The notes under the pieces are model-generated. The model was given only the letters and a program-made list of their open reading frames with translations, was not told the origin of the DNA and did not search any database. From the NCBI GenBank assembly GCA_965655095.1, contig OZ296658.1:60512001-60576000 (forward strand): a stretch of DNA of 64,000 nt, given 5' to 3'. The stretch comes from Haplodiscus bocki (taxonomy: Eukaryota). Position numbers and translations under genes: made by a program. Below, in pieces: positions 1 through 64,000 of this stretch (within the stretch, counting starts at the first letter, position 1; each line of letters starts with the position of its first letter).

Positions 1-3000
1 CCTCACAATGCGCTGCTTAGCTTGGAACACGCTACCTTGATTGCCATGTCTCTTTGTTAGACACACAGCGAACTGCTTCCTTTACGCGAGTGAATTTCGT
101 TAAGTTGTCATTGGAGGTGTCAAGCGAGAAATTGTCCTCTAGCGAAGGCAATTTGAGTTTCTCTTTGGGAAGCCAAGCTGGCAGCTATGAACCGTTGTGG
201 GAAAAACTTGTTTCAGACCACGTCAATCGTGCTCTGTTTCATTGGTTGCTTGTTTCAACTCGACCAAATATACTATCAAAACTGTATCGCATTGATACTG
301 CCCAACTAAATTGTTAAGATCCGTTGTTAATTAAAACGCGAAATACCCCAATAATGTCCCGAAGGTTCCCTAAAGTTCGCTCTGAAGTCTGGGTGACTTG
401 TTTTTTGGGCTGGCCGTTTCCATATAGCAAATTCAGTTTCGCTTCGAATCATGCTGTTTCGAAAGTGTGAACATTTTAGGACAAACTTTCTTTCCTAACA
501 TGCTTATGTTCATCAGTTCCAATAAAGATCGATTTTTTGCAGTGAGGAAAGAAAGTTCGGCTGACTGTTTTCAATCGGCCAAGTTAGACTAGCAGGAGAG
601 AAGGCCGCAATGAGACAAGCCATATAAAATGCCGTGATCCGTTTATGGCCAAACACTGATCTACTACGTTTTTGAGCTTGAGGTTCTTTCAATCAATTGA
701 GGTGTGGGCAAAAACTTCTCATGGGGCCTTTTTCAGGTGGCAGTAACACTTTTGCTTCCATACGAGTTTTGAAATCGACGATCCGTTGTGGGAAAAAAAT
801 CGTTTCAGATCACCTCAATCTGGCGATGTTCTTTGGTTGGTTGTTTCAACTCGACCGAAATGGACTAGCAAAACACAGTATGTCGTTCAAACTGGCTGTA
901 ATAACAAAGGTTAGACAAGGTTTGAAACACCTCGTTCTTCAGCGTGAGTTTCCTTAATGTTTTTTTTCAGGCGTTGTACAAAAATATTCTGGTCGCCTGT
1001 TCTCTTGTAGCACTATTTGTGTCACTTCGAAACATGCTATAATAAAAGCAATAATCCGTTTTAGGACAAATTGTTTTTTATCTACCTCGCTTATGCGCAT
1101 TAATTCCAATAAAAGTCATTGTGACGTTTTAAGTGAGGGATCCCTAATTGCTTGTCCTCTGTTGACTGGAGTATCCTTGCAGTTCTGAGATTCAATGCGA
1201 GATAATTTTTTTTATTTTTAAAATCCGCTCTGGGACAAGTCCACTGTGATGTGCCTCGTTCACGCGCATGACTTTCATTGAGCATCCAATTAATTTTGCG
1301 AGCTGGAAATTGTTGGTTGAGGGTATTCTGTCAGCCATGTTAGACTTGCAAAACTGCATTTCATTTCAAGAATGGTTGTGTTGATTGCACTGATACATTG
1401 TGCAAGAAACTTTGTCTCAACTCCTTTTTAGCTTTTGTTTGTTGGCCGCGTTAGCCCCGCAATATGTAGTATCGCTCCGAAATGGCGTTTAAATTCATGT
1501 CATCCTTGGTCAAGCAACCAGTGATATACCTCATTCATGTGGATGAATTTCGTCAAGTTGTCAATTGGTGTTTTGAACGAGCAACTGCTGCTTGGGTGTT
1601 CTTTCTTGACTATGTTACCCTCACAATGCGCTGCTTAGCTTGGAACACGCTACCTTGATTGCCATGTCTCTTTGTTAGACACACAGCGAACTGCTTCCTT
1701 TACGCGAGTGAATTTCGTTAAGTTGTCATTGGAGGTGTCAAGCGAGAAATTGTCCTCTAGCGAAGGCAATTTGAGTTTCTCTTTGGGAAGCCAAGCTGGC
1801 AGCTATGAACCGTTGTGGGAAAAACTTGTTTCAGACCACGTCAATCGTGCTCTGTTTCATTGGTTGCTTGTTTCAACTCGACCAAATATACTATCAAAAC
1901 TGTATCGCATTGATACTGCCCAACTAAATTGTTAAGATCCGTTGTTAATTAAAACGCGAAATACCCCAATAATGTCCCGAAGGTTCCCTAAAGTTCGCTC
2001 TGAAGTCTGGGTGACTTGTTTTTTGGGCTGGCCGTTTCCATATAGCAAATTCAGTTTCGCTTCGAATCATGCTGTTTCGAAAGTGTGAACATTTTAGGAC
2101 AAACTTTCTTTCCTAACATGCTTATGTTCATCAGTTCCAATAAAGATCGATTTTTTGCAGTGAGGAAAGAAAGTTCGGCTGACTGTTTTCAATCGGCCAA
2201 GTTAGACTAGCAGGAGAGAAGGCCGCAATGAGACAAGCCATATAAAATGCCGTGATCCGTTTATGGCCAAACACTGATCTACTACGTTTTTGAGCTTGAG
2301 GTTCTTTCAATCAATTGAGGTGTGGGCAAAAACTTCTCATGGGGCCTTTTTCAGGTGGCAGTAACACTTTTGCTTCCATACGAGTTTTGAAATCGACGAT
2401 CCGTTGTGGGAAAAAAATCGTTTCAGATCACCTCAATCTGGCGATGTTCTTTGGTTGGTTGTTTCAACTCGACCGAAATGGACTAGCAAAACACAGTATG
2501 TCGTTCAAACTGGCTGTAATAACAAAGGTTAGACAAGGTTTGAAACACCTCGTTCTTCAGCGTGAGTTTCCTTAATGTTTTTTTTCAGGCGTTGTACAAA
2601 AATATTCTGGTCGCCTGTTCTCTTGTAGCACTATTTGTGTCACTTCGAAACATGCTATAATAAAAGCAATAATCCGTTTTAGGACAAATTGTTTTTTATC
2701 TACCTCGTTTATGCGCATTAATTCCAATAAAAGTCATTGTGACGTTTTAAGTGAGGGAGCCCTAATTGCTTGTCCTCTGTTGACTGGAGTATCCTTGCAG
2801 TTCTGAGATTCAATGCGAGATAATTTTTTTTATTTTTAAAATCCGCTCTGGGACAAGTCCACTGTGATGTGCCTCGTTCACGCGCATGACTTTCATTGAG
2901 CATCCAATTAATTTTGCGAGCTGGAAATTGTTGGTTGAGGGTATTCTGTCAGCCATGTTAGACTTGCAAAACTGCATTTCATTTCAAGAATGGTTGTGTT

Positions 3001-6000
3001 GATTGCACTGATACATTGTGCAAGAAACTTTGTCTCAACTCCTTTTTAGCTTTTGTTTGTTGGCCGCGTTAGCCCCGCAATATGTAGTATCGCTCCGAAA
3101 TGGCGTTTAAATTCATGTCATCCCTTGTCAAGCAACCAGCTGTTTAACATTCATGTGGATGAATTTCGTCAAGTTGTCAGTTGCGGTTTCGAACGAGCAA
3201 CTGCTGCTGTTGGGATGTTCTTTTTTGACTTTGTTACCCTCTTAATGCGCTGCTTAGCTGGGAACACGCTAGATTGATTGCCATGACTCTTTGTTAGACA
3301 AACAGCGAACTGCTTCCTTTACGCGAGTGAATTTCGTTAAGTTGTCATTGGAGGTGTCAAGCGAGAAATTTTTCTTTGGCGAAGGCAATTTGAGTTTTGC
3401 TTTGGGAACCCAAGTTCGCAGCATTGAACCGTTGCGGGAAAGGTTTATTCCAGATCACCTCAAACTGGCGCCGTTTTACTGGTTGCTTGTTTCAACTCGA
3501 CCAAATATACCATCAAAACTGTATCGCATTGATATTGCCTAACTACATTGCTGCGACCCGTTGTTAATTAAAGGCGAAATATCCCATTCTTGTCCCGAAG
3601 GTTCCCTAAAGTTCGCTCCGAAGTCTGGGTGAATTGTTTTTTGGTTGGCCGTTTCCGGATATCAATTTCAGTTTTGCTTCGAATCATGCTGTTTTGAAAC
3701 TGTGAACATTTTAGGACAAACTTTGTTTCCTAACATGCTTATGCTCATCAGTTCCAATAAAGATCGATTTTTTGCAGTGAGGAAAAAAATATTGGTTGAC
3801 TGTTTTCAATCGGCCAAGTTAGACTAGCAGAACAGAGTGTTGCAAAGAGGAAAACCATTTACAATGCCGTGAACCGTTTATGGCCAAACACTGATCTACT
3901 ACGTTTTTGAGCTTGAGGTTCTTCCAATCAATTGAGGTGTGGACAAAAACTTCTCATGGGCCTTATTCGGGTAGCAGTAACACTTTTGCTTCCATACTAG
4001 TTCTGAAACCGATGATCCGTTGTGGGAAAAACTTGTTTCGGATCACCTCAATCTGGCGCTGTTCTGTAGCTTGGTTGTTTCAACTCGGCCAAATTAGACT
4101 AGCAAAACACAGTATCGCGTTCAAACTGGCTGTAATATCAAAGGTTAGACAAGGTTTGAAACACCTCGTTTTCCAGCGTGAGTTTCCTTAGTGTTTTTTT
4201 TCAGGCGTGATACAAAAATGTTTGGTCGCCTGTTCTTTTGTAGCACTTTTTGTGTCACTTGGAATCATGCTATCATAAAAGCAATAATCCGATTTGGGAC
4301 AAACTCTTTGTTATCTACCTCGTTTATGCGCATTAATTCCAATAAAAGTCACTGTGAGGTTTTGAGTGAGGGAGCCTTATTTGGTTGTCTTCTGTTGACT
4401 GGAGTGTCATTGCAGTTCTGAGCTTCAATGCGAGATAATATTTTCTATTTTTGTAATCCACTCTGGGAAAAGACCACTGTGATGTGCTTCGTTCACGCGC
4501 ATGAGTTTTATTGAGTTACCATTTATTTTTGCGAGCGCGAAATTGTTGGTTGAGGGTATTTTGTCAGCCGTGTTAGACTTGCAAAACTGCATTTCATTTC
4601 AAGAATCGTTGTGTTGATTGCACTGATGCATTGTGCAAGAAAGTTTGTCTCAGCTCGTTTTGAGCTTTTTTGTGTTGGCTGCGTTAGCCCCGCAATACGT
4701 AGTATCGCTCCGAGACGGCGTTTACATTCATGTCATCCCTTGTCAAGCAAGCAGCGGTTTAACATTCATGTGGATGAATTTCGTCAAGCTGTCAGTTGCG
4801 GTTTCGAACGAGCAACTGCTGCTTGGATGTTCTTTTTTGACTATGTTACCCTCACAATGCGCTGCTTAGCTTGGAACACGCTACCTTGATGGCCAAGACT
4901 ACTTGTTTGACAAACAGCGAACTGCTTCCTTCACGCGAGTGAATTTCGTTAAATTCTCATTGGAGGTGTCAAGCGAGAAATTTTTCTTTGGCGAAGGCAA
5001 TTTGAGTTTTGCTTTGGGAAGCCAAGTTCGCAGCAATGAACCGTTGCGGGAAAGACTTATTTCAGATCACCTCAAACCGGCGCCGTTTTATTGGTTGCTT
5101 GTTTCAACTCGACCAAATATACTATCAAAACTGTATCGCATTGATGCTGCCCAAATACATTGTTGCGATCCGTTGTTAATTAAAGGGCGAAATACCTCAT
5201 TCTTGTCCAGGAGGTTCCTTGATGCTCGCTCTAAAGTCTGGGTGAATTGTTTTTTGGTTGGCCGTTTCCAGATAGCAATTTCAGTTTCGCTTCGAATCAT
5301 GCTGTTTTGAAAGTGTGAATATTTTAGGACAAACTTTGTTTCCTAACATGCTTATGCTCATCAGTTCCAATAACGATAGAATTTTTGCAGTGAGGAAAAA
5401 AATATCGGTTGACTGTTTTCAATCGGCCAAGTTAGACTAGCAGAACAGAGTGTTGCAAAGAGAAAAACCATTTACAATGCCGTGATCCGTTTATGGACAA
5501 ACACTGAACTACTACGGTTTTGAGCTTGAGGCTCTTTCAATCAATTGAGGTGTGGGCAAAAACTTCTCATGGGGCCTTATTCAGGTAGCAGTAACACTTT
5601 TGCTTGCATACTAGTTTTGAAACCGACGATCCGTTGTGGGAAAAAATTGTTCCAGATCACCTCAATCTGGCGCTGTTCTGTTGCTTGGTTGTTTCAACTC
5701 GGCCAAAATATAATAGCAAAACACAGTATCGCGTTCAAACTGGCTGTAATAACAAAGGTTAGACAAGGTTTGAAACACCTCGTTCTTCAGCGTGAGTTTC
5801 CTTAGTGTTTTTTTTCAGGCGTGGTACAAAAATTCTGGTCGCCTGTTCTTTTGTAGCACTAATTGTGTGACTTCGAAACATGCTATAATAAAAGCAATAA
5901 TCCGTCTTGGGACAAATTCTTTGTTATCTACCTCGTTTATGCGCATTAATTCCAATAAAGGTCACTGTGAGGTTTTGAGTGAGGGCGCCTTAATTGGTTG

Positions 6001-6516
6001 CCCTCTGTTGACTGGAGTATCATTGCAGTTCTGAGCTTCAATGCGAGATAATATTTTCTTTTTTTTGTAGTCCACTCTGGGAAAAGACCACTGTGATGTG
6101 CTTCGTTCACGCGCATGAGTTTTATTGAGTTACCATTTATTTTTGCGAGCGCGAAATTGTTGGTTGAGGGTATTTTGTCAGCCGTGTTAGACTTGAAAAA
6201 GTGCATTTCATTCCAAGAATCGTTGTGTTGGTTGCACTGATGCATTGTGCAAGAAACTTTGTCTCAGCTCGTTTTGAGCTTTTGTTTGTTGGCCGCGTTA
6301 GCCCCGCAATACGTAGTATCGCTCCGAGACGGCGTTTACATTCATGTCATCCCTTGTCAAGCAAGCAGCGGTTTAACATTCATGTGGATGAATTTCGTCA
6401 AGTTGTCAGTTGCGGTTTCGAACGAGCAACTGCTGCTTGGATGTTCTTTTTTGACTTTGTTACCCTCTTAATGCGCTGCTTAGCTGGGAACACGCTAGAT
6501 TGATTGCCATGACTCT
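1..6516. repeat. Array A short-unit subtype (1612-1619 bp)
   Basis: Four periods lacking the 74-bp internal duplication. 1-~1500 and 1619-~3120 are nearly identical (differences seen at ~1090 and ~1141). Confidence 0.9.
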
Positions 6517-9500
6517 TTGTTAGACAAACAGCGAACTGCTTCCTTCACGCGAGTGAATTTCGTTAAATTCTCATTGGAGGTGTCCAGCGAGAAATTGTCC
6601 TCTGGCGAAGGCAATTTGAGTTTTGCTTTGGGAAGCCAAGTTAACAGCTATGAACCGTTGTGGGAAAAACTTGTTTCAGATCACCTCAATCGTGCTGTGT
6701 TTCATTGGTTGTTTGTTTCATCTCCACCAAATATACTATCAAAACTGTATCGCATTGATGCTGCCCAACTACATTGTTGCGATCCGTTGTTAATTAAAGG
6801 GCGAAATACCGAAATACCCCATTCTTGTCCAGGAGGTTCCTTGATGCTCGCTCTGAAGTGTGGGCGAATTGTTTGTGGTTGGCCGTTTCCAGATAAAAGT
6901 TTCAGTTTCGCTTCGAATCATGCTGTTTTGAAAGTGGGATCATTTTGGTACAAACCTTGTTTCCTAACATGATTATGCTCGTCAGTTCCAATAAAGATGG
7001 ATTTTTTGCAGTGAGGAAAGAAATATCGGTTGACTGTTTTCAATCGGCCAAGTTAGACTAGCAGAACAGAATGCCGCAATGAGACAAGCCATATACAATG
7101 CCGTGATCCGTTTATGGACAAACATTGAACTACTTCGTTTTTGAGCTTGAAGTTCTTTCAAGTTTCATTTGAGGTGTGGGCAAAAGTTTCTCATGTGGCC
7201 ATTTTCAGGTGGCAGTAACAGTTTTGCCTCCCTACAAGTTTTGATACCGATGATCCGTTGTTTGAAAAACTTGTTTCAGATCACCTCAAGCTGGCGCTGT
7301 TCTGTTGGTGGGTTGTTTCAACTCGGCCAAATTAGACTAGCAAAACAGAGTACAGGGTTGAGACTGGCTAATGGTTGGTTGGTTGGTTGTTTCAACTCGG
7401 CCAAAAGAAGTTAGCAAAACAGAGTGTCGCGTTGAGAATGACTATATAGACGAATGTTAGACAAAGTTCGAGAAACCTCGTTCTTGAGCATGAGTTTCCT
7501 GAGTGTTTTATTTTAAGGCGTGGTACAAAAATTTTTTGGTCGCCTGTTTTCTTGTGGCACTATTTGTGTCACTTCGAAACATGCTTCAATAAAAGCAGGA
7601 ATCCCTTTTGGGACAAACTCTTGTTATCCACCTCGTTTATGCGCATTGGTTCCAATAAAGGTTGATTTGAGGTTTTAGGTGAAGGAGCCTTGTTGGTTGT
7701 CTTCTGTTGATTGGGGTATCATTTCAGTTCCGAGCCTCAATGCGAGATAATTTTTATTTTTGTAATCAGCTCTGGGACAAGTCCACTGTGATGTGCCTCG
7801 TTCACGCGTATGAGTTTCATTGAGAATTCAATTAATTTTGCGACCGCGAAATTTTTGGTTGACGGGATTCTGTCAGCCGTGTTAGACTTGCAAAACTGCA
7901 TTTCATTTCAAGAATCGTTGTGTTGATTGCTCTGATGTTTTGTGCAAGAAACTTTCTCGCAGCTCGTTTTGAGCTTTTGTTTGTTGGCCGCGTTAGCCTC
8001 ACAATACATAGTATCGGTCCGAGACCGCGTTTACATTCATGTCATCATTAGTCAAGCAACCAGCGATATACCTCATTCATGTGGATGAATTTCGTCAAGT
8101 TGTCAATTGGTGTTTTGAACGAGCAACTGCTGCTTGGGTGTTCTTTCTTGACTATGTTACCCTCACAATGCGCTGCTTAGCTTGGAACACGCTACCTTGA
8201 TTGCCATGTCTCTTTGTTAGACACACAGCGAACTGCTTCCCTTACGCGAGTGAATTTCGTTAAGTTGTCATTGGAGGTGTCAAGCGAGAAATTGTCCTCT
8301 AGCGAAGGCAATTTGAGTTTCTCTTTGGGAAGCCAAGCTGGCAGCTATGAACCGTTGTGGGAAAAACTTGTTTCAGACCACCTCAATCGTGCTCTGTTTC
8401 ATTGGTTGTTTGTTTCATCTCGATGAAATATACTATCATAACTGTATCGCGGTGATACTGGCTACATACATTGCGGTAATCCGTTGTTAGTTAAAGGGCG
8501 AAACACCTCATTCTTGTCCAGGAAGTTCCTTGATGCTCGCTCTGAAGTGTGCGTGAATTGTTTGTGGTTGGCCGTTTCCAGATAACAGTTTCAGTTTAAC
8601 TTCGAATCATGCTGTTTTGAAAGTGTGATCATTTTGGTACAAACCTTGTTTCCTAACATGATTATGCTCGTCAGTTCCAATAAAGATGGATTTTTTGCAG
8701 TGAGGAAAGAAATATCGGTTGACTGTTTTCAATCGGCCAAGTTAGACTAGCAGAACAGAATGCCGCAATGAGACAAGCCATATACAATGCCGTGATCCGT
8801 TTATGGACAAACATTGAACTACTTCGTTTTTGAGCTTGAAGTTCTTTCAAGTTTCATTTGAGGTGTGGGCAAAAGTTTCTCATGTGGCCTTTTTCAGGTG
8901 GCAGTAACAGTTTTGCCTCCCTACAAGTTTTGATACCGATGATCCGTTGTTTGAAAAACTTGTTTCAGATCACCTCAAGCTGGCGCTGTTCTGTTGGTGG
9001 GTTGTTTCAACTCGGCCAAATTAGACTAGCAAAACAGAGTACAGGGTTGAGACTGGCTAATGGTTGGTTGGTTGGTTGTTTCAACTCGGCCAAAAGAAGT
9101 TAGCAAAACAGAGTGTCGCGTTGAGAATGACTATATAGACGAATGTTAGACAAAGTTCGAGAAACCTCGTTCTTGAGCATGAGTTTCCTGAGTGTTTTAT
9201 TTTAAGGCGTGGTACAAAAATTTTTTGGTCGCCTGTTTTCTTGTGGCACTATTTGTGTCACTTCGAAACATGCTTCAATAAAAGCAGGAATCCCTTTTGG
9301 GACAAACTCTTTGTTATCCACCTCGTTTATGCGCATTGGTTCCAATAAAGGTTGATTTGAGGTTTTAGGTGAAGGAGCCTTGTTGGTTGTCTTCTGTTGA
9401 CTGGGGTATCATTTCAGTTCCGAGCTTCAATGCGAGATAATTTTTTTTTCTTTTTGTAATCCGCTCTGGGACAAGACCACTGTGATGTGCCTCGTTCACG

Positions 9501-12500
9501 CGTATGAGTTTCGTTGAGAATTCAATTAATTTTGCGACCGCGAAATTGTTGGTTGAGGGGATTCTGTCAGCCGTGTTAGACTTGCAAAACTGCATTTCAT
9601 TTCAAGAATCGTTGTGTTGATTGCTCTGATGTTTTGTGCAAGAAACTTTCTCGCAGCTCGTTTTGAGCTTTTGTTTGTTGGCCGCGTTAGCCTCACAATA
9701 CATAGTATCGGTCCGAGACCGCGTTTACATTCATGTCATCCTTAGTCAAGCAACCAGCGATATACCTCATTCATGTGGATGAATTTCGTCAAGTTGTCAA
9801 TTGGTGTTTTGAACGAGCAACTGCTGCTTGGGTGTTCTTTCTTGACTATGTTACCCTCACAATGCGCTGCTTAGCTTGGAACACGCTACCTTGATTGCCA
9901 TGTCTCTTTGTTAGACACACAGCGAACTGCTTCCTTTACGCGAGTGAATTTCGTTAAGTTGTCATTGGAGGTGTCAAGCGAGAAATTGTCCTCTAGCGAA
10001 GGCAATTTGAGTTTCTCTTTGGGAAGCCAAGCTGGCAGCTATGAACCGTTGTGGGAAAAACTTGTTTCAGACCACCTCAATCGTGCTCTGTTTCATTGGT
10101 TGTTTGTTTCATCTCGATGAAATATACTATCATAACTGTATCGCGGTGATACTGGCTACATACATTGCGGTAATCCGTTGTTAGTTAAAGGGCGAAACAC
10201 CTCATTCTTGTCCAGGAAGTTCCTTGATGCTCGCTCTGAAGTGTGCGTGAATTGTTTGTGGTTGGCCGTTTCCAGATAACAGTTTCAGTTTAACTTCGAA
10301 TCATGCTGTTTTGAAAGTGTGATCATTTTGGTACAAACCTTGTTTCCTAACATGATTATGCTCGTCAGTTCCAATAAAGATGGATTTTTTGCAGTGAGGA
10401 AAGAAATATCGGTTGACTGTTTTCAATCGGCCAAGTTAGACTAGCAGAACAGAATGCCGCAATGAGACAAGCCATATACAATGCCGTGATCCGTTTATGG
10501 ACAAACATTGAACTACTTCGTTTTTGAGCTTGAAGTTCTTTCAAGTTTCATTTGAGGTGTGGGCAAAAGTTTCTCATGTGGCCTTTTTCAGGTGGCAGTA
10601 ACAGTTTTGCCTCCCTACAAGTTTTGATACCGATGATCCGTTGTTTGAAAAACTTGTTTCAGATCACCTCAAGCTGGCGCTGTTCTGTTGGTGGGTTGTT
10701 TCAACTCGGCCAAATTAGACTAGCAAAACAGAGTACAGGGTTGAGACTGGCTAATGGTTGGTTGGTTGGTTGTTTCAACTCGGCCAAAAGAAGTTAGCAA
10801 AACAGAGTGTCGCGTTGAGAATGACTATATAGACGAATGTTAGACAAAGTTCGAGAAACCTCGTTCTTGAGCATGAGTTTCCTGAGTGTTTTATTTTAAG
10901 GCGTGGTACAAAAATTTTTTGGTCGCCTGTTTTCTTGTGGCACTATTTGTGTCACTTCGAAACATGCTTCAATAAAAGCAGGAATCCCTTTTGGGACAAA
11001 CTCTTTGTTATCCACCTCGTTTATGCGCATTGGTTCCAATAAAGGTTGATTTGAGGTTTTAGGTGAAGGAGCCTTGTTGGTTGTCTTCTGTTGACTGGGG
11101 TATCATTTCAGTTCCGAGCTTCAATGCGAGATAATTTTTTTTTTTTGTAATCCGCTCTGGGACAAGACCACTGTGATGTGCCTCGTTCACGCGTATGAGT
11201 TTCGTTGAGAATTCAATTAATTTTGCGACCGAGAAATTGTTGGTTGAGGGGATTCTGTCAGCCGTGATAGACTTGCAAAACTGCATTTCATTTCAAGAAT
11301 AGTTGTGTTGATTGCTCTGATGGATTGTGCAAGAAACTTTCTCTCAGCTCGTTTTGAGCTTTTGTTGGCCGCGTTAGCCTCACAATACGTACTATCGGTC
11401 CGAGACCGCGTTTACATTCATGTCATCCTTGGTCAAGCAACCAGCGATATACCTCATTCATGTGGATGAATTTCGTCAAGTTGTCAATTGGTGTTTTGAA
11501 CGAGCAACTGCTGCTTGGGTGTTCTTTCTTGACTATGTTACCCTCACAATGCGCTGCTTAGCTTGGAACACGCTACCTTGATTGCCATGTCTCTTTGTTA
11601 GACACACAGCGAACTGCTTCCTTTACGCGAGTGAATTTCGTTAAGTTGTCATTGGAGGTGTCAAGCGAGAAATTGTCCTCTAGCGAAGGCAATTTGAGTT
11701 TCTCTTTGGGAAGCCAAGCTGGCAGCTATGAACCGTTGTGGGAAAAACTTGTTTCAGACCACCTCAATCGTGCTCTGTTTCATTGGTTGTTTGTTTCATC
11801 TCGATGAAATATACTATCATAACTGTATCGCGGTGATACTGGCTACATACATTGCGGTAATCCGTTGTTAGTTAAAGGGCGAAACACCTCATTCTTGTCC
11901 AGGAAGTTCCTTGATGCTCGCTCTGAAGTGTGCGTGAATTGTTTGTGGTTGGCCGTTTCCAGATAACAGTTTCAGTTTAACTTCGAATCATGCTGTTTTG
12001 AAAGTGTGATCATTTTGGTACAAACCTTGTTTCCTAACATGATTATGCTCGTCAGTTCCAATAAAGATGGATTTTTTGCAGTGAGGAAAGAAATATCGGT
12101 TGACTGTTTTCAATCGGCCAAGTTAGACTAGCAGAACAGAATGCCGCAATGAGACAAGCCATATACAATGCCGTGATCCGTTTATGGACAAACATTGAAC
12201 TACTTCGTTTTTGAGCTTGAAGTTCTTTCAAGTTTCATTTGAGGTGTGGGCAAAAGTTTCTCATGTGGCCTTTTTCAGGTGGCAGTAACAGTTTTGCCTC
12301 CCTACAAGTTTTGATACCGATGATCCGTTGTTTGAAAAACTTGTTTCAGATCACCTCAAGCTGGCGCTGTTCTGTTGGTGGGTTGTTTCAACTCGGCCAA
12401 ATTAGACTAGCAAAACAGAGTACAGGGTTGAGACTGGCTAATGGTTGGTTGGTTGGTTGTTTCAACTCGGCCAAAAGAAGTTAGCAAAACAGAGTGTCGC

Positions 12501-47118: not shown

Positions 47119-47119
47119 G

Positions 47120-50100: not shown

Positions 50101-50560
50101 AACTTTCGGCTTTCTTCAATTGATTGACGACAAAAATCATTCCAGATTTGTTCTGCACCTCCCAGTACAATTGTTATATTCCAAAAGTAAATTGAATTCT
50201 GTGTAATTGTTTACTTGGTTTTTTGGTAGAATCACTTTCCCCATAACATTAGTTGAAATTGCTCGATAAAATCACAAGTAATCCACTGTCACGAATGTTG
50301 CCAAGCTCAGCGTCATCTCTGGGTCTCAGTTGTGAGGCAAAGTAAACTTGAAGTAGCTTTTAGTGTGTCTGACTTCCAATTACAATCCATTTGATATCTC
50401 TAACGAGGAATTAATGGTCCGCTACTTTCCAGTTGGTGAAGTTAAACTCGCAGTTTTAAATTCAGCTTGCACACACGCCAGGGTTTTTGCTGTAACCCAC
50501 TTTAAAGCACACGGCTTTTCTTTGGAAAGGTTTATTCGCTTTGGTCTTGGTTGGTCCTTC
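47120..50560. repeat. Pair of closely similar units with a 1842-bp period (~153-bp deletion at ~48932)
   Basis: ORFs 47619/49461 (offset 1842) and 48522/50363 (offset 1841). Junction reads ttttccagcttgc|ttctcgagatttgc. Confidence 0.88.
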
Positions 50561-53500: not shown

Positions 53501-56500
53501 ACAATTATTAAACCTGAGACAACACAATTCGTGTCAAATTGAGTCTTCAGTGGTTTTGGTAGCACCTCTTCGCCATTCAAATTGAGATATATTTGCTCAA
53601 TATGTTCACTGGTATGTCGTTGGTGCAGATATTGTCAGGTTCAGCTTCGCTTGTCGGTCTAAGTTGTGAGAAAAGGTATGTTTGACTTACTGTGTGCCCA
53701 AGTTCGGATGAGAAACCGACTCGTTTTACAATCAAGCAAAGTTTGTTTGCTCCTTTTCTGTTGGTTAGCTTAGACAAGGAAGTTATTATTTTGCATCCCG
53801 GCACAAATTTTGATGGCTGTACTCCACTAAGACGAACTGCTTCTTCTTCAAACAGTTGATGCGCCTTCTTGCTGTTTGATTACTTCTATTGGCCAAGTTT
53901 TGCCCACAAAAAAAAGAGCTTCAGTTTGATATTTGCTCAGAATATACCTTCTGTGGCAAATGTAAAGTCGTTGTTCTTTTCCCTCTTTCACGTTCACTTA
54001 CAGTTCAAATTTGTGTCTACGTAAAGATTGTTCCTAGATTTTCATCGAACCCCATCAATTTGTTGGGAAAAGTTAATCACGGGGCGTTTTTTCAAACTTT
54101 CGGCTTGCTTCAATTAATTGACGACAAATTTCCTTCCAGATTTTTTCTGCACCTCCCAATACGATTGTTAGATTCCGAAAGTAAAATGAAATCTGTGTAA
54201 ATGTTTACTTGGTTTTTTGGTAGAATCACTTTCCCCATAACATTAGTTGAACTTGCTCGATGAAATCACAAGTAACCAACTGTCACGAATGATGCCAAGC
54301 TGAGCGTCATCGCTGGGTCTCAGTTGTGAGGCAAAGTAAACTTGAAGTAGTTGTTTAGTGTGTCTGATTTCCAATTAGAATCCATTTGATATCTCGAACG
54401 AGGAATTAATGGTCCGCTACTTTCCAGTTGGTGAAGTTAACATCGCAGTTTTAAATTCAGCTTGCACACACGCCAGGGTTTTTGCTGTAACCCACTTTAA
54501 AGCACACGGCTTTTCTTTGGAAAGGTTTATTCGCTTTGGTCTTGGTTGGTCCTTCCAACTGGGCCACGTTCTGTTTGCAAAAAAAAGACCTTCGCTTCAA
54601 GTTTTGCTGTAGTTCACCAGCGGAGGCAAGTTTTCTTTCGAACTGTTTTTGGTTTTACCCTTCCGTACAATTCCTACTTTTGTGCCTGCATACTAAAGTT
54701 GCCTAGACTTTGCTCAAGCGTTCACGATGTTTTCCATGGAAAGAATACCGTGGCTGGTTTTCCAGCTTGCACGTTTGTTTTAGTTCAACATTAAGAGAAT
54801 TGACCGCTAAAGTTGGTTGCGCTACTTAATATCAAATATATACACCTTAGTTGAGTAAACTTTTGTGTACTTGTGAAATCAGTAAGTTTGCTAGTACATC
54901 TTTACCTTCATTATCAGCAATACTTCTCGAGATTTGCGCTAGTGTTCCCTTAGCGCGTATGTTGCCATGCTCAGCTACTCCACTGTGTCCTTGTTCTGGT
55001 TCAGGTGAAATTGAGCTACATCGTTTGTTTGGATGAGTTCCTTTTGGTGTCATTTGATGTCTCGAGCGGGAATAATGTTGCTTGGTTGTTATTAGTTGGT
55101 CAATTTTTACCTGCAAGACTGAGATTTGCTTCCAGATACGCTGTATTGATTACTGCGATACGGTGCGATACATAGGAGAGTTTTTTTAACTTCATTTGAG
55201 CGCCGTTCTTTGAATAATTGTTCAAGTTGGCAAGAGTACGCCCCAATAGGACGCTTTCCTCTGAGACTCGCACAATTACATTTGATTGAGAAAAAGTCCA
55301 TCTTAGTCGTTTTTCTTTTTTCCACTCGCTCCCAGCTCGCATTTGTGCTCTCATGCTGTTGTTATTACCTAAATTTTCTCCATGCATCTTTGATTTCTTG
55401 CAATAAAACTGTCACGTGGCCTAATTGCTAGCTCTTATGCTGGTTTCAGTTGAACAACAGCCGAAATTTTTCCAATAGTTGTATTTTTTTGCACCACAAA
55501 ATTATTAAACCTGAGACAACAGAATTCGTGTCAAAATGATTCTTCAGTAGTTTTGGCAGCACCTCTTCGCCATTCAAAATGAGATATGTTTGCTCAATAT
55601 GTTCACTGGTGTGTCGTTGGTGCAGATATCGTCAGGTTCAGCTTCACTTGGCGGTCTAAGTTGTGAGACAAGCTATGTTTGACTTACTGTGTGCCCAAGT
55701 TCTGATGAGAGACCGACTCCTTTCACAATCAAGCAAACTTTGGTTGCTTCTTTCCTGTTGGTTAGCTTAGACAGGCAAGTTTTAGTTTTGCATCCCGGCA
55801 CAAGTTTTGATAACTGTACTCCACTAAGACGAACTGCTTCTTTTTCAAACAGTTGATGCGCCTTCATGCTGTTTGATTACTTCATTTGGCCAAGTTTTGC
55901 TCACAAAAATGAGCTTCACTTTGATATTTGCCCAGAATATTCCTTCTGTGGCAAATGTGAAGTCGTTGTTCTTTGCCCTCTTTCACGTTCGTTTACAGTT
56001 CACATTTGTGTCTACGTAAAAATTGTTCCTAGAATTTAATCGAACCCCATCTATTTGTTGGAAAAAGTTGATCACGGGGCGTTTTTTCAAACTTTCGGCT
56101 TTCTTCAATAGATTGACGACAAAAATCATTCCAGATTTGTTCTGCACCTCCCAGTACAATTGTTATATTCCAAAAGTAAATTGAATTCTGTGTAATTGTT
56201 TACTTGGTTTTTTGGTAGAATCACTTTCCCCATAACATTAGTTGAACTTGCTCGATAAAATCACAAGTAATCCACTGTCACGAATGTTGCCAAACTCAGC
56301 GTCATCTCTGGGTCTCAGTTGTGAGGCAAAGTAAACTTGAAGTAGATTTCTAGTGTGTCTGACTTCCAATTAGAATCCATTTGATATCTCGAACGAGGAA
56401 TTAATGGTCCGCTACTTTCCAGTTGGTGAAGTTAACCTCGCAGTTTTAAATTCAGCTTGCACACACGCCAGGGTTTTTGCTGTAACCCATTTCAAAGCAC

Positions 56501-57279
56501 ACGGCTTTTCTCTGAAAATAAATATTCGCTTTGGTCTTGGTTGGTCCTTCCAAAGGGCCACGTTCTGTTTGCAAAAAAATACCTTCGCTTCAATTTTTGC
56601 TGTAGTTCACCAGTGCAGGCAACTTTTCTTTCTAACTGGTTTTTGTTTTTCCCTTCCGTTCAAGTCTTATATTTTTGCCTGCATACTGAAGTTGCCTAGA
56701 CTTTGCTCAAGCGTTCACGATGTTTTCCATGGAAAGAATACCGTGGCTTGTTTTCCAGCTTGCACGTTTGTTTTAGTTCAACATTAACAGAATTGACCGC
56801 TAAAGTTGGTTGCACTACTTAAAATCAAACATATACACCATGGTTGAGTAAACATTTGTTTGTTTGTGAAATCTGTAATTTTGACAGTACATCTTTACCT
56901 TCTTTGTCGGCAAAACTTCTCGAGATTTGCGCTAGTGTTCCCTTGGCGCTAATGTTGCCATGCTCAGCTACGCCTCTGGGTCTTTGTTGTGGTTCAGTTG
57001 ATTATGAGTCACATCGTTTGTTTGCATGAGTTCCATTTGGAGTCCTTTTGATGTCTCGAGCGAGAATAATGTTGCTTGGTTGTTTTTATTTTGTCATTTT
57101 TTACCTGCAAAACAGAGATTTGCTTCCAGATACGCTGAATTGATTACTGCGATAGGGTGCGATACAGAGGAGAATTTTTTTAACTTCATTTGACCGCGGT
57201 TTTTTTAATAATTGTTCAAGTTGGTAAGAGTACGCCCCAATAGGACGCTTTGCTCTGAGACTCGCACAATTACACCTGC

Positions 57280-60200
57280 TTGAGAAAAAATCCATCACAG
57301 TCGTTTTTCTTTTTTCCACTCGCTCCCAGCTCGCATTTGTGCTCCCATGCTGAAGTTAATACCTAAACTTTGTCCATGCATCTTTGATTTCTTGCAATAA
57401 AACTGTCACTTGGCCTAATTCCTAGCTCTTATGCTGGTTTCAGTTAAACAACAGCCGAAACTTCTCCAAAAGTTGTATATTTTTGCACCACACAATTATT
57501 AAACCTGCGACAACAGAATTCGTGTCAAATTGATTCTTCAGTAGTTTCGGTAGCACCTCTTTGCCTTTCAAAAAATATATAGTTGCTCAAAATGTTCAAT
57601 GGTCTTTCGTTGGTGCAGATATTGTCAGGTTCAGCTTCGCTTGTCTGTCTAAGTTGTGAGAAAAGCTATGTTTGACTTACTGTGTGCCCAAGTTCCGATG
57701 AGAAACCGACTCATTCCACAATCAAGCAAAAATTGGTTGGTTCTTTTCTGTTGGTTAGCTTAGACAGGCAATTTATATTTTTGCATCCCGGCACAAGTTT
57801 TGAGAACTGTACTCCACAAAGACGAACTGCTTCTTTTTCAAACAGTTGATGCGCCTTCATGCTGTTTGATCACTTCTATTGGCCAAGTTTTGCTCACAAA
57901 AAAAGAGATTCATTTTGATATTTGCTCAGAATATACCTTCTGTGGCAAATGTAAAGTCGTCATTTTTTCCCTCTTTCACGTTCATTTACAATTCACATTC
58001 GTGTCTACGTAAAAATTGTTCCTAGATTTTATTCGAACCCCATCAATTTGTTGGAAACAGTTAATCAGGTAGCGTTTTTTCGGCTTTCTTCAATTGGTTG
58101 GCAACAAAAATATTTCCAAATTTTTTCTGCACCTCCCAATACAAATGTTATACTCCAAAAAAAATTAAAAATCTGGGTAAATGTTTACTTGGTTTTTTGG
58201 TAGAATCACTTTCCACATAATATTAGTGGAACTTGCTCGATATAATCACAAGTAATTGACTGGCGCAAATGTTGCCAGGCTCAGCGTCAGCTCTGGGTCT
58301 CAGTTGTGAGGCAAAGTAAACTTCAAGTGGCTTTTTATTGTGTCTGATTTCCAATTAGAATCCATTTGATAAATCGAGCGAGGAATTAATGGTCCGCTAG
58401 TTTCCAGTTGGTGAAGTTAACCTCGCAGTTTTAAATTCAGCTTCCACACACGCCATATTGGTTGCTGTAACCCACTATAAAGCACACGGACTTTCTTTGA
58501 AATAGTTTATTCGCTTTGGTCTTGGTTGGTCCTTCCAGTGGGCCAGGTGCTGTTTACAAAAAAAGATCTTCGCTTCAAGTTTTGCTGTAGTTCACCAGCG
58601 GAGGCAACTTTTCTTTCGAGCTGTTTTTGGTTTTTCCCTTCTGTTCAAGGCCTAGTTTTTTGCCTGCATACTAAAGTTGCCTAGACTTTGCTCAAGCGTT
58701 CACGATGTTTTCCATGAAAAGATTACCGTGACTTGTTCTCTAGCTTGCACGTTTGTTTTAGTTCAACATTAACAGAATTGACCGCTAAAGTTGGTTGCGC
58801 TACCTAATATTGCATATACACACCTTGGTTAAGTGAACTTTTGTTTGTTTGTGAAATCTGTAAGTTTGATAGTACATCTTTACCTTCTTTATCAGCAATA
58901 CTTCTCGAGATTTGCGCTGGTGTTCCCTTGGCGCAAATGTTGCCATGCTCAGCTACGCCTCTGGGTCTTTGTTGTGGTTCAGTTGATTATGAGTCACATC
59001 GTTTGTTTGCATGAGTTCCATTTGGAGTCCATTTGATGTCTCGAGCGGGAATAATAATGCTTGGTTGTTATTAGTTGGTCAATGTTTACCTGCAAAACTG
59101 AGATTTGCTTCCAGATACGCTGTATTGATTACTGCGATATGTTGCGATACAGAGGAGAGTTTCTTAACTTCATTTGAGCGCTGTCTTCTGGTTAATTGTT
59201 CAAGTTGGTAAGAGTACGCCCCAATAGGAGGCTTTGCTCTGAGACTCACACAATTACACCTGCTTGAGAAAAAATCCATCACAGTCGTTTTTCTTTTTTC
59301 CACTCGCTCCCAGCTCGCATTTGTGCTCCCATGCTGAAGTTAATACCTAAACTTTGTCCATGCATCTTTGATTTCTTGCAATAAAACTGTCACTTGGCCT
59401 AATTCCTAGCTCTTATGCTGGTTTCAGTTAAACAACAGCCGAAACTTCTCCAAAAGTTGTATATTTTTGCACCACACAATTATTAAACCTGCGACAACAG
59501 AATTCGTGTCAAATTGATTCTTCAGTAGTTTCGGTAGCACCTCTTTGCCTTTCAAAAAATATATAGTTGCTCAAAATGTTCAATGGTCTTTCGTTGGTGC
59601 AGATATTGTCAGGTTCAGCTTCGCTTGTCTGTCTAAGTTGTGAGAAAAGCTATGTTTGACTTACTGTGTGCCCAAGTTCCGATGAGAAACCGACTCATTC
59701 CACAATCAAGCAAAAATTGGTTGGTTCTTTTCTGTTGGTTAGCTTAGACAGGCAATTTATATTTTTGCATCCCGGCACAAGTTTTGAGAACTGTACTCCA
59801 CAAAGACGAACTGCTTCTTTTTCAAACAGTTGATGCGCCTTCATGCTGTTTGATCACTTCTATTGGCCAAGTTTTGCTCACAAAAAAAGAGATTCATTTT
59901 GATATTTGCTCAGAATATACCTTCTGTGGCAAATGTAAAGTCGTCGTTTTTTCCCTCTTTCACGTTCATTTACAATTCACATTCGTGTCTACGTAAAAAT
60001 TGTTCCTAGATTTTATTCGAACCCCATCAATTTGTTGGAAACAGTTAATCAGGTAGCGTTTTTTCGGCTTTCTTCAATTGGTTGGCAACAAAAATATTTC
60101 CAAATTTTTTCTGCACCTCCCAATACAAATGTTATACTCCAAAAAAAATTAAAAATCTGGGTAAATGTTTACTTGGTTTTTTGGTAGAATCACTTTCCAC

Positions 60201-61258
60201 ATAATATTAGTGGAACTTGCTCGATATAATCACAAGTAATTGACTGGCGCAAATGTTGCCAGGCTCAGCGTCAGCTCTGGGTCTCAGTTGTGAGGCAAAG
60301 TAAACTTCAAGTGGCTTTTTATTGTGTCTGATTTCCAATTAGAATCCATTTGATAAATCGAGCGAGGAATTAATGGTCCGCTAGTTTCCAGTTGGTGAAG
60401 TTAACCTCGCAGTTTTAAATTCAGCTTCCACACACGCCATATTGGTTGCTGTAACCCACTATAAAGCACACGGACTTTCTTTGAAATAGTTTATTCGCTT
60501 TGGTCTTGGTTGGTCCTTCCAGTGGGCCAGGTGCTGTTTACAAAAAAAGATCTTCGCTTCAAGTTTTGCTGTAGTTCACCAGCGGAGGCAACTTTTCTTT
60601 CGAGCTGTTTTTGGTTTTTCCCTTCTGTTCAAGGCCTAGTTTTTTGCCTGCATACTAAAGTTGCCTAGACTTTGCTCAAGCGTTCACGATGTTTTCCATG
60701 AAAAGATTACCGTGACTTGTTCTCTAGCTTGCACGTTTGTTTTAGTTCAACATTAACAGAATTGACCGCTAAAGTTGGTTGCGCTACCTAATATTGCATA
60801 TACACACCTTGGTTAAGTGAACTTTTGTTTGTTTGTGAAATCTGTAAGTTTGATAGTACATCTTTACCTTCTTTATCAGCAATACTTCTCGAGATTTGCG
60901 CTGGTGTTCCCTTGGCGCAAATGTTGCCATGCTCAGCTACGCCTCTGGGTCTTTGTTGTGGTTCAGTTGATTATGAGTCACATCGTTTGTTTGCATGAGT
61001 TCCATTTGGAGTCCATTTGATGTCTCGAGCGGGAATAATAATGCTTGGTTGTTATTAGTTGGTCAATGTTTACCTGCAAAACTGAGATTTGCTTCCAGAT
61101 ACGCTGTATTGATTACTGCGATATGTTGCGATACAGAGGAGAGTTTCTTAACTTCATTTGAGCGCTGTCTTCTGGTTAATTGTTCAAGTTGGTAAGAGTA
61201 CGCCCCAATAGGAGGCTTTGCTCTGAGACTCACACAATTACACCTGCTTGAGAAAAAA
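57280..61258. repeat. Near-perfect duplication with a 1984-bp period, followed by a closely related third unit
   Basis: ORFs 57800/59784 and 58833/60817 (offset 1984), then 62804 (offset 1987). Shared small deletion gcgttttttcggcttt lacking caaacttt. Confidence 0.92.
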
Positions 61259-64000
61259 GTCCATCACAGTCGTTTTTGTTTTTTTCACTCGCTCCCAGCT
61301 CGCGTTTGTGCTCTCATGCTGAAGTTACTACCCAGGTTTTGCCCATGCATCTTTGATTTCTTGCAATAAAAAATGTCAGGTGGCCTAAATGCTAGCTCTT
61401 TTGCTGGTTTCAGTTAAACAACAAACGAAACTTCTCCAAAAGTTGTATATTTTTGCACCACACAATTATTAAACCTGAGACAACACAATTCGTCTCAAAT
61501 TGATTCTTCAGTAGTTTTGGCAGCACCTCTTCGCCATTCAAAATAAGATATAGTTGCTCAATACGTTCACTGGTGTGTCGTTGGTGCAGATATTGCCAAT
61601 TTCAGCTTCGCTTGTCTGTCTAAGTTGTGAGAAAAGCTATGTTTGACTTACTGTGTGCCCAAGTTCCGATGAGAAACCGACTCATTCCACAATCAAGCAA
61701 AAAATGGTTGGTTCTTTTCTGTTGCTTAGCTTAGACAGGCAATTTATAATTTTGCATCCCGGCACAAGTTTTGAGAACTGTACTCCACAAAGACGAACTG
61801 CTTCTTTTTCAAACAGTTGATGCGCCTTCATGCTGTTTGATCACTTCTTTTGGCCAAGTTTTGCTCACAAAAAAAGAGATTCATTTTGATATTTGCTCAG
61901 AATAAACCTTCTGTGGCAAATGTAAAGTCGTCGTTTTTTCCCTCTTTCACGTTCATTTACAATTCACATTCGTGTCTACGTAAAAATTGTTCCTAGATTT
62001 TATTCGAACCCCACCAATTTGTTGGAAAAAAAAAATCAGGGAGCGTTTTTTCGGCTTTCTTCAATTGATTGGCAACAAAAATGTTTCCAAAATTTTTCTG
62101 CACCTCCCAATACAAATGTTATACTCCAAAAAAAATTAAAAATCTGGGTAAATGTTTACTTGGTTTTTTGGTAGAATCACTTTCCACATAATATTAGTGG
62201 AACTTGCTCGATATATTCACAAGTAATCCACTGGAGCGAATGTTGCCAAGCTCAGCGTCAGCTCTGGGTCTCAGTTGTGAGGCAAAGTAAACTTCAAGTG
62301 GCTTTTTATTGTGTCTGATTTCCAATTAGAATCCATTTGATAAATCGAGCGAGGAATTAATGGTCCGCTAGTTTCCAGTTGGTGAAGTTAACCTCGCAGT
62401 TTTAAATTCAGCTTCCACACACGCCATATTGGTTGCTGTAACCCACTATAAAGCACACGGACTTTCTTTGAAATAGTTTATTCGCTTTGGTCTTGGTTGG
62501 TCCTTCCAGTGGGCCAGGTGCTGTTTACAAAAAAAGATCTTCGCTTCAAGTTTTGCTGTAGTTCACCAGCGGAGGCAACTTTTCTTTCGAGCTGTTTTTA
62601 GTTTTTCCCTTCCGTCCAAGGCCTAGTTTTTTGCCTGCATACTAAAGTTGCCTAGACTTTGCTCAAGCGTTCACGATGTTTTCCATGAAAAGATTACCGT
62701 GACTTGTTCTCTAGCTTGCACGTTTGTTTTAGTTCAACATTAACAGAATTGACCGCTAAAGTTGGTTGCGCTACCTAATATTATATATACACACTTTGGT
62801 TAAGTGAACTTTTGTTTGTTTGTGAAATCTGTAAGTTTGATAGTACATCTTTACCTCCTTTATCAGCAATACTTCTCGAGATTTGCGCTGGTGTTCCCTT
62901 GGCGCAAATGTTGCCATGCTCAGCTACGCCTCTGGGTCTTTGTTGTGGTTCAGTTGATTATGAGTCACATCGTTTGTTTGCATGAGTTCCATTTGGAGTC
63001 CATTTGATGTCTCGAGCGGGAATAATAATGCTTGGTTGTTATTAGTTGGTCAATGTTTACCTGCAAAACTGAGATTTGCTTCCAGATACGCTGTATTGAT
63101 TACTGCGATATGTTGCGATACAGAGGAGAGTTTCTTAACTTCATTTGAGCGCTGTCCTCTGGTTAATTGTTCAAGTTGGTAAGAGTACGCCCCAATAGGA
63201 CGCTTTGCTCTGAGACTCACACAATTACACCTGCTTGAGAAAAAAGTCCATCACAGTCGTTTTTGTTTTTTTCACTCGCTCCCAGCTCGCGTTTGTGCTC
63301 TCATGCTGAAGTTACTACCTAGGTTTTGTCCATGCATCTTTGATTTCTTGCAATAAAAATGTCAGGTGGCCTAAATGCTAGCTCTTTTGCTGGTTTCAGT
63401 TAAACAACAGTCGAAACTTCTCCAAAAGTTGTATATTTTTGCACCACACAATTATTAAACCTGAGACAACACAATTCGTCTCAAATTGATTCTTCAGTAG
63501 TTTTGGCAGCACCTCTTCGCCTTTCAAAGAAAGATATAGTTGCTCAATACGTTCACTGGTGTGTCGTTGGTGCAGATATTGCCAGTTTCAGCTTCGCTGG
63601 TCAGTCTAAATTTTGAGAAAAGGTATGTTGGATTACTGTGAGCCCAAGTTCCGATGAGAAACCGACTCTTTTCACAATCAAGAAAAAAGTGGTTGGTTCT
63701 TTTCTGTTGGTTAGCTTAGACAGGCAATTTATATTTTTGCCTCCCGGCACAAGTTTTGAGAACTGTACTCCACAAAGACGAACTGCTTCTTTTTCAAACA
63801 TTTTATGCGCCTTCTTGCTGTTTGATTACTTCTTTTGGCCAAGTTTTGCTCACAAAAAAGAGCTTCATTTTGATATTTGCTCAGAATATACCTTCTGTGG
63901 CAATTGTAAAGTTGTTGTTTTTTTCCCTCTTTCACGTTCATTTACAGTACACATTTGTGTCTACGTAAGAATTGTTCCTAGATTTTATTCGAACCCCATC

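What the first reader, a model, noticed from the sequence alone, without database searches (positions are those of the whole stretch)
1..64000. Arrays A and B descend from one ancestral repeat but fixed different higher-order periods
A at 4499-4670 and B at 59009-59180 are colinear: gcatgagtt...ccattt...cgagcg...tgcaaaactg...tgt(g/a)ttgatt...tttgagc. Offsets from the first anchor match (tgcaaaactg +81 vs +82; tttgagc +160 vs +164). The following short monomer also matches (A ttggttgtttcaactcggccaaa...tcgcgttcaaactggctgta; B ttggttggtccttccagtgggccagg...tcgcttcaagttttgctgta). So a full+short monomer doublet is shared, embedded in a ~590-bp block in A and a ~666-bp block in B. Each block appears to have been triplicated (1.6 kb and 2.0 kb). 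I do not recognise this family, and it may be undescribed.
Basis: partly seen in the sequence, partly recalled or inferred. Interest (0 to 1): 0.7.

Follow-up and report, generated by a model that had tools for sequence, protein, structure and literature searches.

The report
Two related cryptic higher-order satellite arrays
The window holds two adjoining non-coding tandem arrays (1.6-1.7 kb and 2.0 kb units) that both descend from one local ~172-bp satellite and share a derived full-plus-shortened monomer pair; this is real but an ordinary kind of satellite evolution.

Summary
Observation confirmed. The anchors sit at the stated offsets. A profile of the A doublet scores 37.6 bits on B. Reversed B gives no hit, and 300 dinucleotide shuffles reach at most 9.3 bits.

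Array A has about 21 units and spans about 36 kb. Its unit is 11 head-to-tail monomers in three blocks: FFFS (599 bp), FFS (435 bp) and FFFS (583 bp). Array B has about 52 units and spans about 106 kb. Its unit is three colinear ~665-bp blocks, each made of F, S and ~365 bp with no monomer signal.

In both arrays S is a monomer with the same ~40-bp internal deletion. No sampled canonical monomer carries it, so the doublet is a shared derived state. A tree groups A's three doublets apart from B's three, which suggests the blocks multiplied separately.

Both arrays belong to a ~375-kb, single-polarity satellite domain found only on contig C11. It includes a ~115-kb canonical array of 170-175-bp monomers about 135 kb upstream.

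There are no ORFs with family hits, no tRNAs and no Rfam matches. Dfam, Repbase and nt could not be searched, so "undescribed" remains untested. Earlier scan notes report similar cryptic higher-order repeats on other contigs of this genome. Nothing tested here bears on a centromere role.

The parts
1..7238 (+). Array A, subfamily A1: units of 1615-1624 bp (boundaries 767, 2385, 4001, 5615). The array continues upstream of the window to about -19450.
   Evidence: units 89-94% identical to each other; A.hmm gives full-length hits.
7239..15686 (+). Array A, subfamily A2: five units of 1687-1694 bp that carry a 74-bp tandem duplication of the short monomer. Units are 96-99% identical.
   Evidence: (TRF period 74, five times).
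4499..4760 (+).
   Evidence: (anchors).
8992..10653 (+). Monomer map of one A2 unit. S 8992-9059; duplicated S 9060-9139; F 9157-9307; F 9316-9474; F 9482-9646; S core 9667-9753; F 9757-9920; F 9922-10061; S core 10096-10188; F 10192-10338; F 10356-10506; F 10508-10653. The order is FFFS | FFS | FFFS.
   Evidence: mono.hmm hits, 35-106 bits, all on + strand.
15687..17024 (+). Degenerate, truncated A-type units at the right edge of array A.
   Evidence: A.hmm partial hits, 73% identity; single-copy read depth.
17049..21457 (+). Degenerate B-type units at the left edge of array B, 67-74% identical to core units. A and B simply abut here; no intermediate forms are present.
21458..32735 (+). Array B, subfamily B1: 1995-bp units alternating with 1765-1775-bp units (deletion of consensus 1677-1895), giving a 3.76-kb super-repeat. 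Units 23453-25227 and 27213-28987 are 100% identical.
32736..56518 (+). Array B, subfamily B2: ~1995-2000-bp units, 87-100% identical. One unit (48685-50525) has a 152-bp deletion.
56519..64000 (+). Array B, subfamily B3: ~1985-bp units, 94-97% identical. The array continues downstream of the window to about +122732.
59009..59245 (+).
58589..58990 (+). Example of segment X, the ~365-400 bp of each ~665-bp B block with no detectable monomer homology. It may be captured or inserted non-satellite DNA.
   Evidence: no hits from mono, canonical or sub-monomer HMMs, nor to A, C or D; found only in B copies.

Best explanation
A and B are two adjoining, non-coding, same-strand tandem arrays. Both belong to one ~172-bp (170/173/175-bp) satellite family that is specific to contig C11.

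Inferred history:
1. A monomer array acquired a variant monomer S with a ~40-bp internal deletion. This created an F+S doublet.
2. Two lineages carrying that doublet then diverged. In the A lineage a four-monomer block (FFFS, ~590 bp) was multiplied to three blocks, one of which lost a monomer. The result is an 11-monomer unit of 1615 bp. In the B lineage the doublet became joined to ~365 bp of unrelated sequence (X), and that 665-bp block was triplicated into a 2.0-kb unit.
3. Much later, when the monomers were only 45-63% alike, each long unit was itself amplified. A reached about 21 copies and B about 52, with units 86-100% identical.
4. Turnover is still going on. Evidence for this is the 74-bp duplication subfamily in A, the deletion variants and 3.76-kb super-repeat in B, and units that are 100% identical.

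Shown: the homology, the monomer maps, the shared deletion, the block structure, and identity that is high in the array cores and low at the edges.

Inferred: the order of events, and the mechanism. The mechanism is taken to be unequal crossing-over or segmental tandem duplication at different registers, with local homogenisation. I assign no sequence-specific function; the arrays are most likely neutral satellite DNA.
For: - A/B homology far above shuffled and reversed controls.
- The monomer HMM tiles the whole A unit. In each B block it finds only F and S.
- All 541 monomer hits in 264 kb are on the + strand.
- A canonical array of full-length monomers lies at C11:60.261-60.377 Mb.
- Family motifs give 292 and 225 forward hits, 0 reverse hits, and none on contigs C1-C10.
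- Five of the six S monomers resume at canonical position 71-75, 32-34 bp after the end of F in the four best-defined doublets; A_S719 resumes at 81 after 20 bp, a ~57-bp deletion.
- No S-type spacing was found among 79 + 97 canonical monomers.
- A blocks are 57-61% identical against a shuffled null of 43%. B blocks are 58-60% identical, uniformly along the block and including X.
- Units within each array are 86-100% identical, with diverged edge units.
- In the ML tree of FS doublets, A's three group together (80/86), B's three group together (85/89) and the canonical dimers group together (100/99).
- No ORF longer than 221 aa, and no Pfam, tRNA or Rfam hits.
- Contigs from two samples reproduce the junction.
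Against: - At the substitution level, A and B monomers are no closer to each other (37-63%) than each is to the canonical type-d consensus (55-74%). A specific A+B ancestor therefore rests on the shared deletion alone, and that deletion lies between short direct repeats and could in principle recur.
S-type monomers there are excluded only by an exact-anchor pattern.
- The within-array grouping in the tree has only moderate support and could reflect concerted evolution, not independent multiplication.
- The origin of X is unknown.
Confidence: 0.8

Rival explanations
1. A and B arose independently from the canonical ~172-bp monomer library. Their likeness is only family-level homology, and the short monomer arose twice by slippage between the same short direct repeats.
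For: A-B monomer identities (37-63%) are no higher than A-canonical or B-canonical identities. The deletion is flanked by TTG(T/G)-type microhomology in the canonical monomer. In the tree A, B and canonical form three separate groups with no resolved A+B clade.
Against: Five of the six S monomers share the resume point (canonical position 71-75); the 32-34-bp spacer holds for four, and A_S719 has a larger, ~57-bp deletion (resume at 81). None of 176 sampled canonical monomers has this deletion, and the short-gap pattern hits only B. In every case S directly follows a full F, and a single local alignment runs through F and on into S.
Confidence: 0.15
2. The domain is the centromeric or pericentromeric satellite of chromosome C11. 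On this view A and B are old, displaced higher-order-repeat layers beside a younger core, as in primate alpha-satellite centromeres, and would matter for kinetochore position or heterochromatin.
For: Monomers are of nucleosome length. The domain is single, chromosome-specific, about 375 kb long and of one polarity. It has higher-order repeats of many periods and layered identity. Earlier scan notes describe comparable domains on other contigs (not checked here).
Against: There are no CENP-A, methylation or cytological data. The satellite total is only about 270 kb and is interrupted by about 100 kb of non-satellite DNA that includes a Maverick-type polymerase B gene. The older arrays lie on one side only, as far as could be read. 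Earlier follow-ups on similar arrays also found no centromere evidence.
Confidence: 0.15
3. The arrays are transposon-derived: the monomers are the internal tandem repeats of a mobile element (Helitron, Helentron or Maverick end), and A and B grew from inserted copies.
For: An earlier scan note reports a ~176-bp monomer family inside thousands of Helitron-like elements elsewhere in this genome (unchecked). A Maverick-type polymerase B lies 90 kb upstream. The unit of array C is one monomer plus the DNA flanking the canonical array's edge, so segments at array edges do get copied.
Against: Family-specific motifs occur only in this C11 domain, all on one strand, with no hit on C1-C10. An A-specific 22-mer is confined to this locus. 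A B-specific 22-mer occurs outside it only in a 5-kb copy on C5 that abuts an assembly gap. No transposon protein domains were found in the arrays.
Confidence: 0.07

Closest known systems
Primate alpha-satellite higher-order repeats (171-bp monomers, chromosome-specific HOR arrays, layered centromeres; abstracts of PMC4131833, PMC5052062 and PMC11062924 as listed)
   Same: Monomers of about 170-175 bp arranged head to tail in one polarity. Multi-monomer units that are far more alike than the monomers inside them. Two distinct HOR arrays side by side in one chromosome-specific domain. Homogeneous cores with diverged edges.
   Different: This is a non-primate 1.5-Gb genome, and no sequence relationship to alpha satellite was tested or is claimed. 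Monomers within a unit are much more diverged (45-63%). The arrays are small (36 and 106 kb). Over half of the B unit is not monomer-derived. There is no evidence of CENP-A or CENP-B binding.
Single-locus macrosatellites (kilobase-unit tandem arrays such as D4Z4 or DXZ4; from general knowledge)
   Same: Units of 1.6-2.0 kb, tens of copies, essentially one locus, and copy variants that spread locally.
   Different: The units carry no gene or ORF and can be resolved into old satellite monomers. They sit inside a larger satellite domain of the same family.
Transposon-linked ~160-170-bp satellites of marine invertebrates (for example oyster satellitomes; abstracts of PMC8268682 and PMC11136912)
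   Same: Similar monomer length in a marine-invertebrate-type genome rich in Mavericks and Helitrons (organism as given in scan notes; not verified here).
   Different: Those satellites are scattered genome-wide in short arrays inside mobile elements. This family is confined to one ~375-kb domain on one contig.

Membership tests
Higher-order-repeat (HOR) satellite architecture | The repeat unit is an integer string of monomers of one family, head to tail. | tested here: met
   Array A: 8 full and 3 short monomers tile the 1615-bp unit, all on the + strand. For array B this is only partly met: F+S (~300 bp) of each 665-bp block is monomer-derived and X (~365 bp) is not.
Higher-order-repeat (HOR) satellite architecture | Identity between units is far higher than identity between monomers within a unit. 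| tested here: met
   Units are 86-100% identical. Monomers within a unit are 37-63% identical, up to 81% among the S copies.
Common descent of A and B from one F+S doublet | Similarity above composition-matched chance, plus a shared derived structural change. | tested here: met
   37.6 bits against at most 9.3 in 300 shuffles, and no hit on reversed sequence. All six S monomers share the ~40-bp deletion, which is absent from 176 sampled canonical monomers.
Centromeric satellite | Association with CENP-A or the kinetochore, or a hypomethylated dip, at the array. | not testable with these tools
   No chromatin or methylation data were available. No RNA runs were listed.
Centromeric satellite | One dominant satellite domain per chromosome. 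| tested here: inconclusive
   The family is confined to C11:60.26-60.635 Mb. Other satellites on C11 were not surveyed, and earlier notes list a tRNA array 43 Mb away.
Transposon-derived or dispersed satellite | Monomers or units are found dispersed inside mobile-element copies genome-wide. | tested here: not met
   Motif and 22-mer searches hit only this domain, apart from one 5-kb B copy on C5 beside an N gap. There is one weak 71% match on C2.
Described repeat family (Dfam, Repbase, nt) | A sequence match to a curated consensus. | not testable with these tools
   No such library is available. Rfam gave 0 hits. Two literature searches found no satellite description for corals or other cnidarians that fits.

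The most novel reading that the evidence does not exclude
The ~375-kb, single-polarity, chromosome-specific domain (canonical 172-bp array, then arrays C, A and B) is the centromere region of this chromosome. A and B would be expelled older layers. If so, a non-bilaterian-type animal genome (a coral according to scan notes) would have alpha-satellite-like, chromosome-specific HOR centromeres. New long-period layers would be born at array edges by co-amplifying satellite with flanking DNA, as seen for B's segment X and for array C.
Probability: 0.15. Interest if true: 0.6.

Novelty: new member of a known kind. Interest (0 to 1): 0.3.

Why it matters
The locus is a clean worked example of how kilobase-unit "macrosatellites" arise from an old short-monomer satellite. 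Three features make it so. A shared derived deletion ties two arrays with different periods to one ancestral doublet. One array recruited non-satellite DNA into its unit. Both were re-amplified long after their monomers had decayed.

It also defines a chromosome-specific satellite domain that could serve as a cytogenetic marker, or as a candidate region if centromeres are mapped in this species. It adds no new kind of element or mechanism.

Tried and rejected
- Chance or composition as the cause of the A/B match: rejected by dinucleotide-shuffle and reversed controls.
- Coding or RNA gene content: no ORF longer than 221 aa, four ORFs without a Pfam hit, no tRNA, no Rfam family.
- X as decayed monomers: full, canonical and three sub-monomer HMMs give nothing inside X, although F and S of the same age score 20-117 bits and the B blocks diverge uniformly. 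There is only a weak hint (E 0.15-0.29, one block) that X ends in a monomer 3' end.
- X related to array C, the D copies, or the flank of the canonical array: no hit.
- One-to-one correspondence of A's three F monomers with the canonical trimer types c, d and e: not seen; all are closest to type d.
- Intermediate A/B units at the junction: none, only degenerate A and degenerate B units.
- Genome-wide mapping with the DNA or model search: saturated by local copies, or skipped as common words.
- Organism identity: coded in the run table. 'Coral' comes only from earlier scan notes and was not verified.
- Literature: no matching satellite description found.
Full report
**What is in the window.** The whole 64-kb window is non-coding tandem DNA at about 40% G+C, T-rich on the + strand.
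- K-mer spacing and unit mapping show array A at 1-16705. Its units are 1615-1624 bp up to 7238. From 7239 to 15686 they are 1687-1694 bp, because a 74-bp piece is tandemly duplicated.
- Array B runs from about 17049 to the end of the window, with units of about 1985-2000 bp. Within it, 21458-32735 alternates 1995-bp and ~1770-bp units as a 3.76-kb super-repeat.
- No ORF exceeds 221 aa. The four longest have no Pfam hit, and there are no tRNAs or Rfam families.
- The window is G000:C11:60512001-60576000 in a 1.5-Gb eukaryotic assembly. Earlier scan notes call the organism a coral. I did not verify that.

**Checking the observation.**
- Standard blastn finds no A/B match.
An HMM of the A doublet (4499-4760 in all nine aligned units) scores 37.6 bits (E 2e-12) on B at 59009-59245 and 60993-61229. 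It gives nothing on reversed B, and at most 9.3 bits on 300 dinucleotide-preserving shuffles.
- Whole-unit HMMs agree. A against the B consensus scores 32.1 bits (best of 200 shuffles -0.3). B against the A consensus scores 22.4 bits (best shuffle 1.7).
- The similarity is real and lies on the same strand.

**Anatomy of array A.** An iteratively built monomer HMM of 166 positions tiles the A unit completely. It finds eight full monomers (F, 140-165 bp) and three short ones (S), all head to tail. The order is FFFS | FFS | FFFS. The three blocks are 599, 435 and 583 bp long. They align colinearly at 57-61% identity, against a shuffled null of 43% with a maximum of 47.5%.

**Anatomy of array B.** The unit is three blocks of 662, 666 and 667 bp that are colinear over their full length. 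Block-to-block identity is 58-60% and is uniform along the block. Each block holds one F and one S, together about 300 bp, followed by about 365 bp ('X').
- X gives no signal with the mixed monomer HMM, with a canonical-monomer HMM or with three sub-monomer HMMs. It also matches nothing in A.
- F and S in the same blocks score 20-117 bits, and the blocks diverge evenly. X is therefore unlikely to be decayed monomers. It looks like unrelated DNA that joined the block before the triplication.
- In the genome search X was found only in B copies.

With 200 kb of flanks fetched, A extends from window coordinate -19450 to 16705 (about 21 units, 36 kb). B extends from 17049 to 122732 (about 52 units, 106 kb). 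Both have degenerate units at their outer edges and at their mutual junction.
- All 541 monomer hits in these 264 kb are on the + strand.
- About 135 kb upstream lies a canonical array of 170/173/175-bp monomers. Adjacent monomers are 74% identical and i+2 or i+3 neighbours about 82%. Local periods include 340, 520, 690 and 1190 bp. Every monomer matches the HMM end to end at 52-116 bits.
- Pattern and model searches place this canonical array at C11:60,261,288-60,376,690.
- Family motifs give 292 and 225 forward hits, no reverse hits and no hits for the control patterns. No hit is on contigs C1-C10.
- An A-specific 22-mer occurs only at this locus (three two-mismatch hits elsewhere, close to the control count). 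A B-specific 22-mer occurs only here and in one 5-kb copy on C5.
- A and B are thus two members of a ~375-kb, single-polarity satellite domain specific to this contig.

**Is the doublet a shared derived state or only family likeness?** At the substitution level A and B monomers are no closer to each other (37-63%) than each is to the canonical type-d consensus (55-74%). Taken alone, that would allow independent origins. The S monomers decide the matter.
- Aligned with a canonical dimer, all six doublets (three in A, three in B) keep the first ~33 bp of the second monomer. They then skip about 38-43 bp (57 bp in one A copy) and resume at canonical position 71-75.
- None of the 97 canonical monomers read here has such a length.
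- An anchor pattern with the full-length gap finds 79 monomers, all in the canonical array. The same anchors with the short gap find 6, all in array B.
- A maximum-likelihood tree of the doublets groups A's three (support 80/86), B's three (85/89) and four canonical dimers (100/99) separately. This fits block multiplication after the A/B split, though concerted evolution could mimic it.
- I therefore read the F+S doublet as a single-origin variant inherited by both arrays, with about 80% confidence.

**Mechanism.**
- Shown: old monomers (45-63% alike) sit inside young units (86-100% alike; two B units 3.76 kb apart are identical). Local subfamilies are marked by indels that spread to neighbouring units. 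Array cores are homogeneous and edges are diverged.
- Inferred: repeated unequal exchange or segmental tandem duplication at different registers fixed an 11-monomer register in A and a 3 x (F+S+X) register in B. The long units were then re-amplified.
- Array C gives a parallel case of a new long-period array forming from a satellite edge plus its neighbouring DNA. Its 2045-bp unit pairs one monomer with DNA homologous to the right flank of the canonical array (74% over 434 bp).

**Assembly check.** Logan contigs from two samples were laid on 15500-21400. One 5,683-bp contig of run X1 spans 15863-21400 with 10 differences, and run X4 covers the same stretch in several pieces. Word depth is about 31 over the junction and 220-860 in array A, as expected for a single-copy junction beside a multi-copy array. 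The runs may include the sample used for the assembly, so this support is only partly independent.

**Comparison and novelty.** In layout this is closest to alpha-satellite HOR domains. It shares the monomer length, the single polarity, the chromosome specificity and the adjacent distinct HOR arrays. It differs in that there is no sequence link, the monomers are far more decayed, the arrays are small, one unit is more than half non-satellite, and there is no centromere evidence.
- It is not a dispersed transposon-linked satellite by the tests possible here.
- Dfam, Repbase and nt are not available, so the claim that the family is undescribed stays open. Two literature searches found nothing relevant.
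- Earlier notes of this scan report similar cryptic HORs of ~158-180-bp monomers on other contigs of the same genome. The phenomenon is therefore common in this genome.

**Verdict.** It is a new member of a known kind, of modest interest.

Noticed in passing
L027:1-10000 and L025:1-6690 (C11:60360001-60376690); by pattern hits back to C11:60261288: Canonical tandem array of 170/173/175-bp monomers of the same family, about 115 kb long and all on the + strand. It has several local higher-order periods: 340, 520, 690 and 1190 bp in the part read, and 1054 and 1171 bp by hit spacing further left.
   Followed up: partly
L001:1 to L002:5550 (window coordinates -100000 to about -84450); related copies in L007:2270-7700 (about -37730 to -32300): A third long-period array, 'C': 2045-bp units that are 96-99.8% identical and extend beyond the DNA fetched. 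Each unit has one monomer plus ~1.9 kb of other DNA. Unit positions 519-942 are homologous (74%) to the last monomer plus right flank of the canonical array (L025:6594-7023). Two to three 80-87% copies lie 50 kb further right.
   Followed up: partly
L003:6356-9574 (-), window coordinates -73644 to -70426: Three adjoining ORFs of 306, 414 and 402 aa. The first has a protein-primed DNA polymerase B domain (PF03175, E 7.7e-8). This is probably a Maverick/Polinton-type element lying between arrays C and A.
   Followed up: no
L022:6614 to L023:1695 (C5:7091614-7096695, - strand): A 5,083-bp copy of about 2.6 B units on another contig, 96.7% identical to window 57503-62580. It directly abuts a run of N on one side. 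It is either a recent transposed duplicate or a mis-scaffolded piece.
   Followed up: partly
L021:4001-6000 and L024:8001-10000 (C5): Stretches with 170- and 335-340-bp periodicity that do not match the monomer HMM of this family (E <= 1e-4). They appear to be a different ~170-bp satellite.
   Followed up: no
window 23453-25227 vs 27213-28987; 40696-46688: Very recent turnover inside array B. Two 1775-bp units 3.76 kb apart are 100% identical, and three consecutive 2-kb units are 99.7-99.85% identical.
   Followed up: yes
alignment A1, columns 42-46: All eleven full monomers of A and B lack the same 5 bases that most canonical monomers have. One canonical monomer type (for example L027:1274-1437) lacks them too. 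A and B may therefore derive from that 170-bp subtype.
   Followed up: no
G000:C2:120320501-120320718: A single 71% match to canonical monomers on another contig. It may be a distant relative of the family outside C11. It could not be fetched.
   Followed up: no
L018:3065-3264 (window coordinates 137065-137264): A 200-N assembly gap 14 kb beyond the right end of array B. It was left as is.
   Followed up: no
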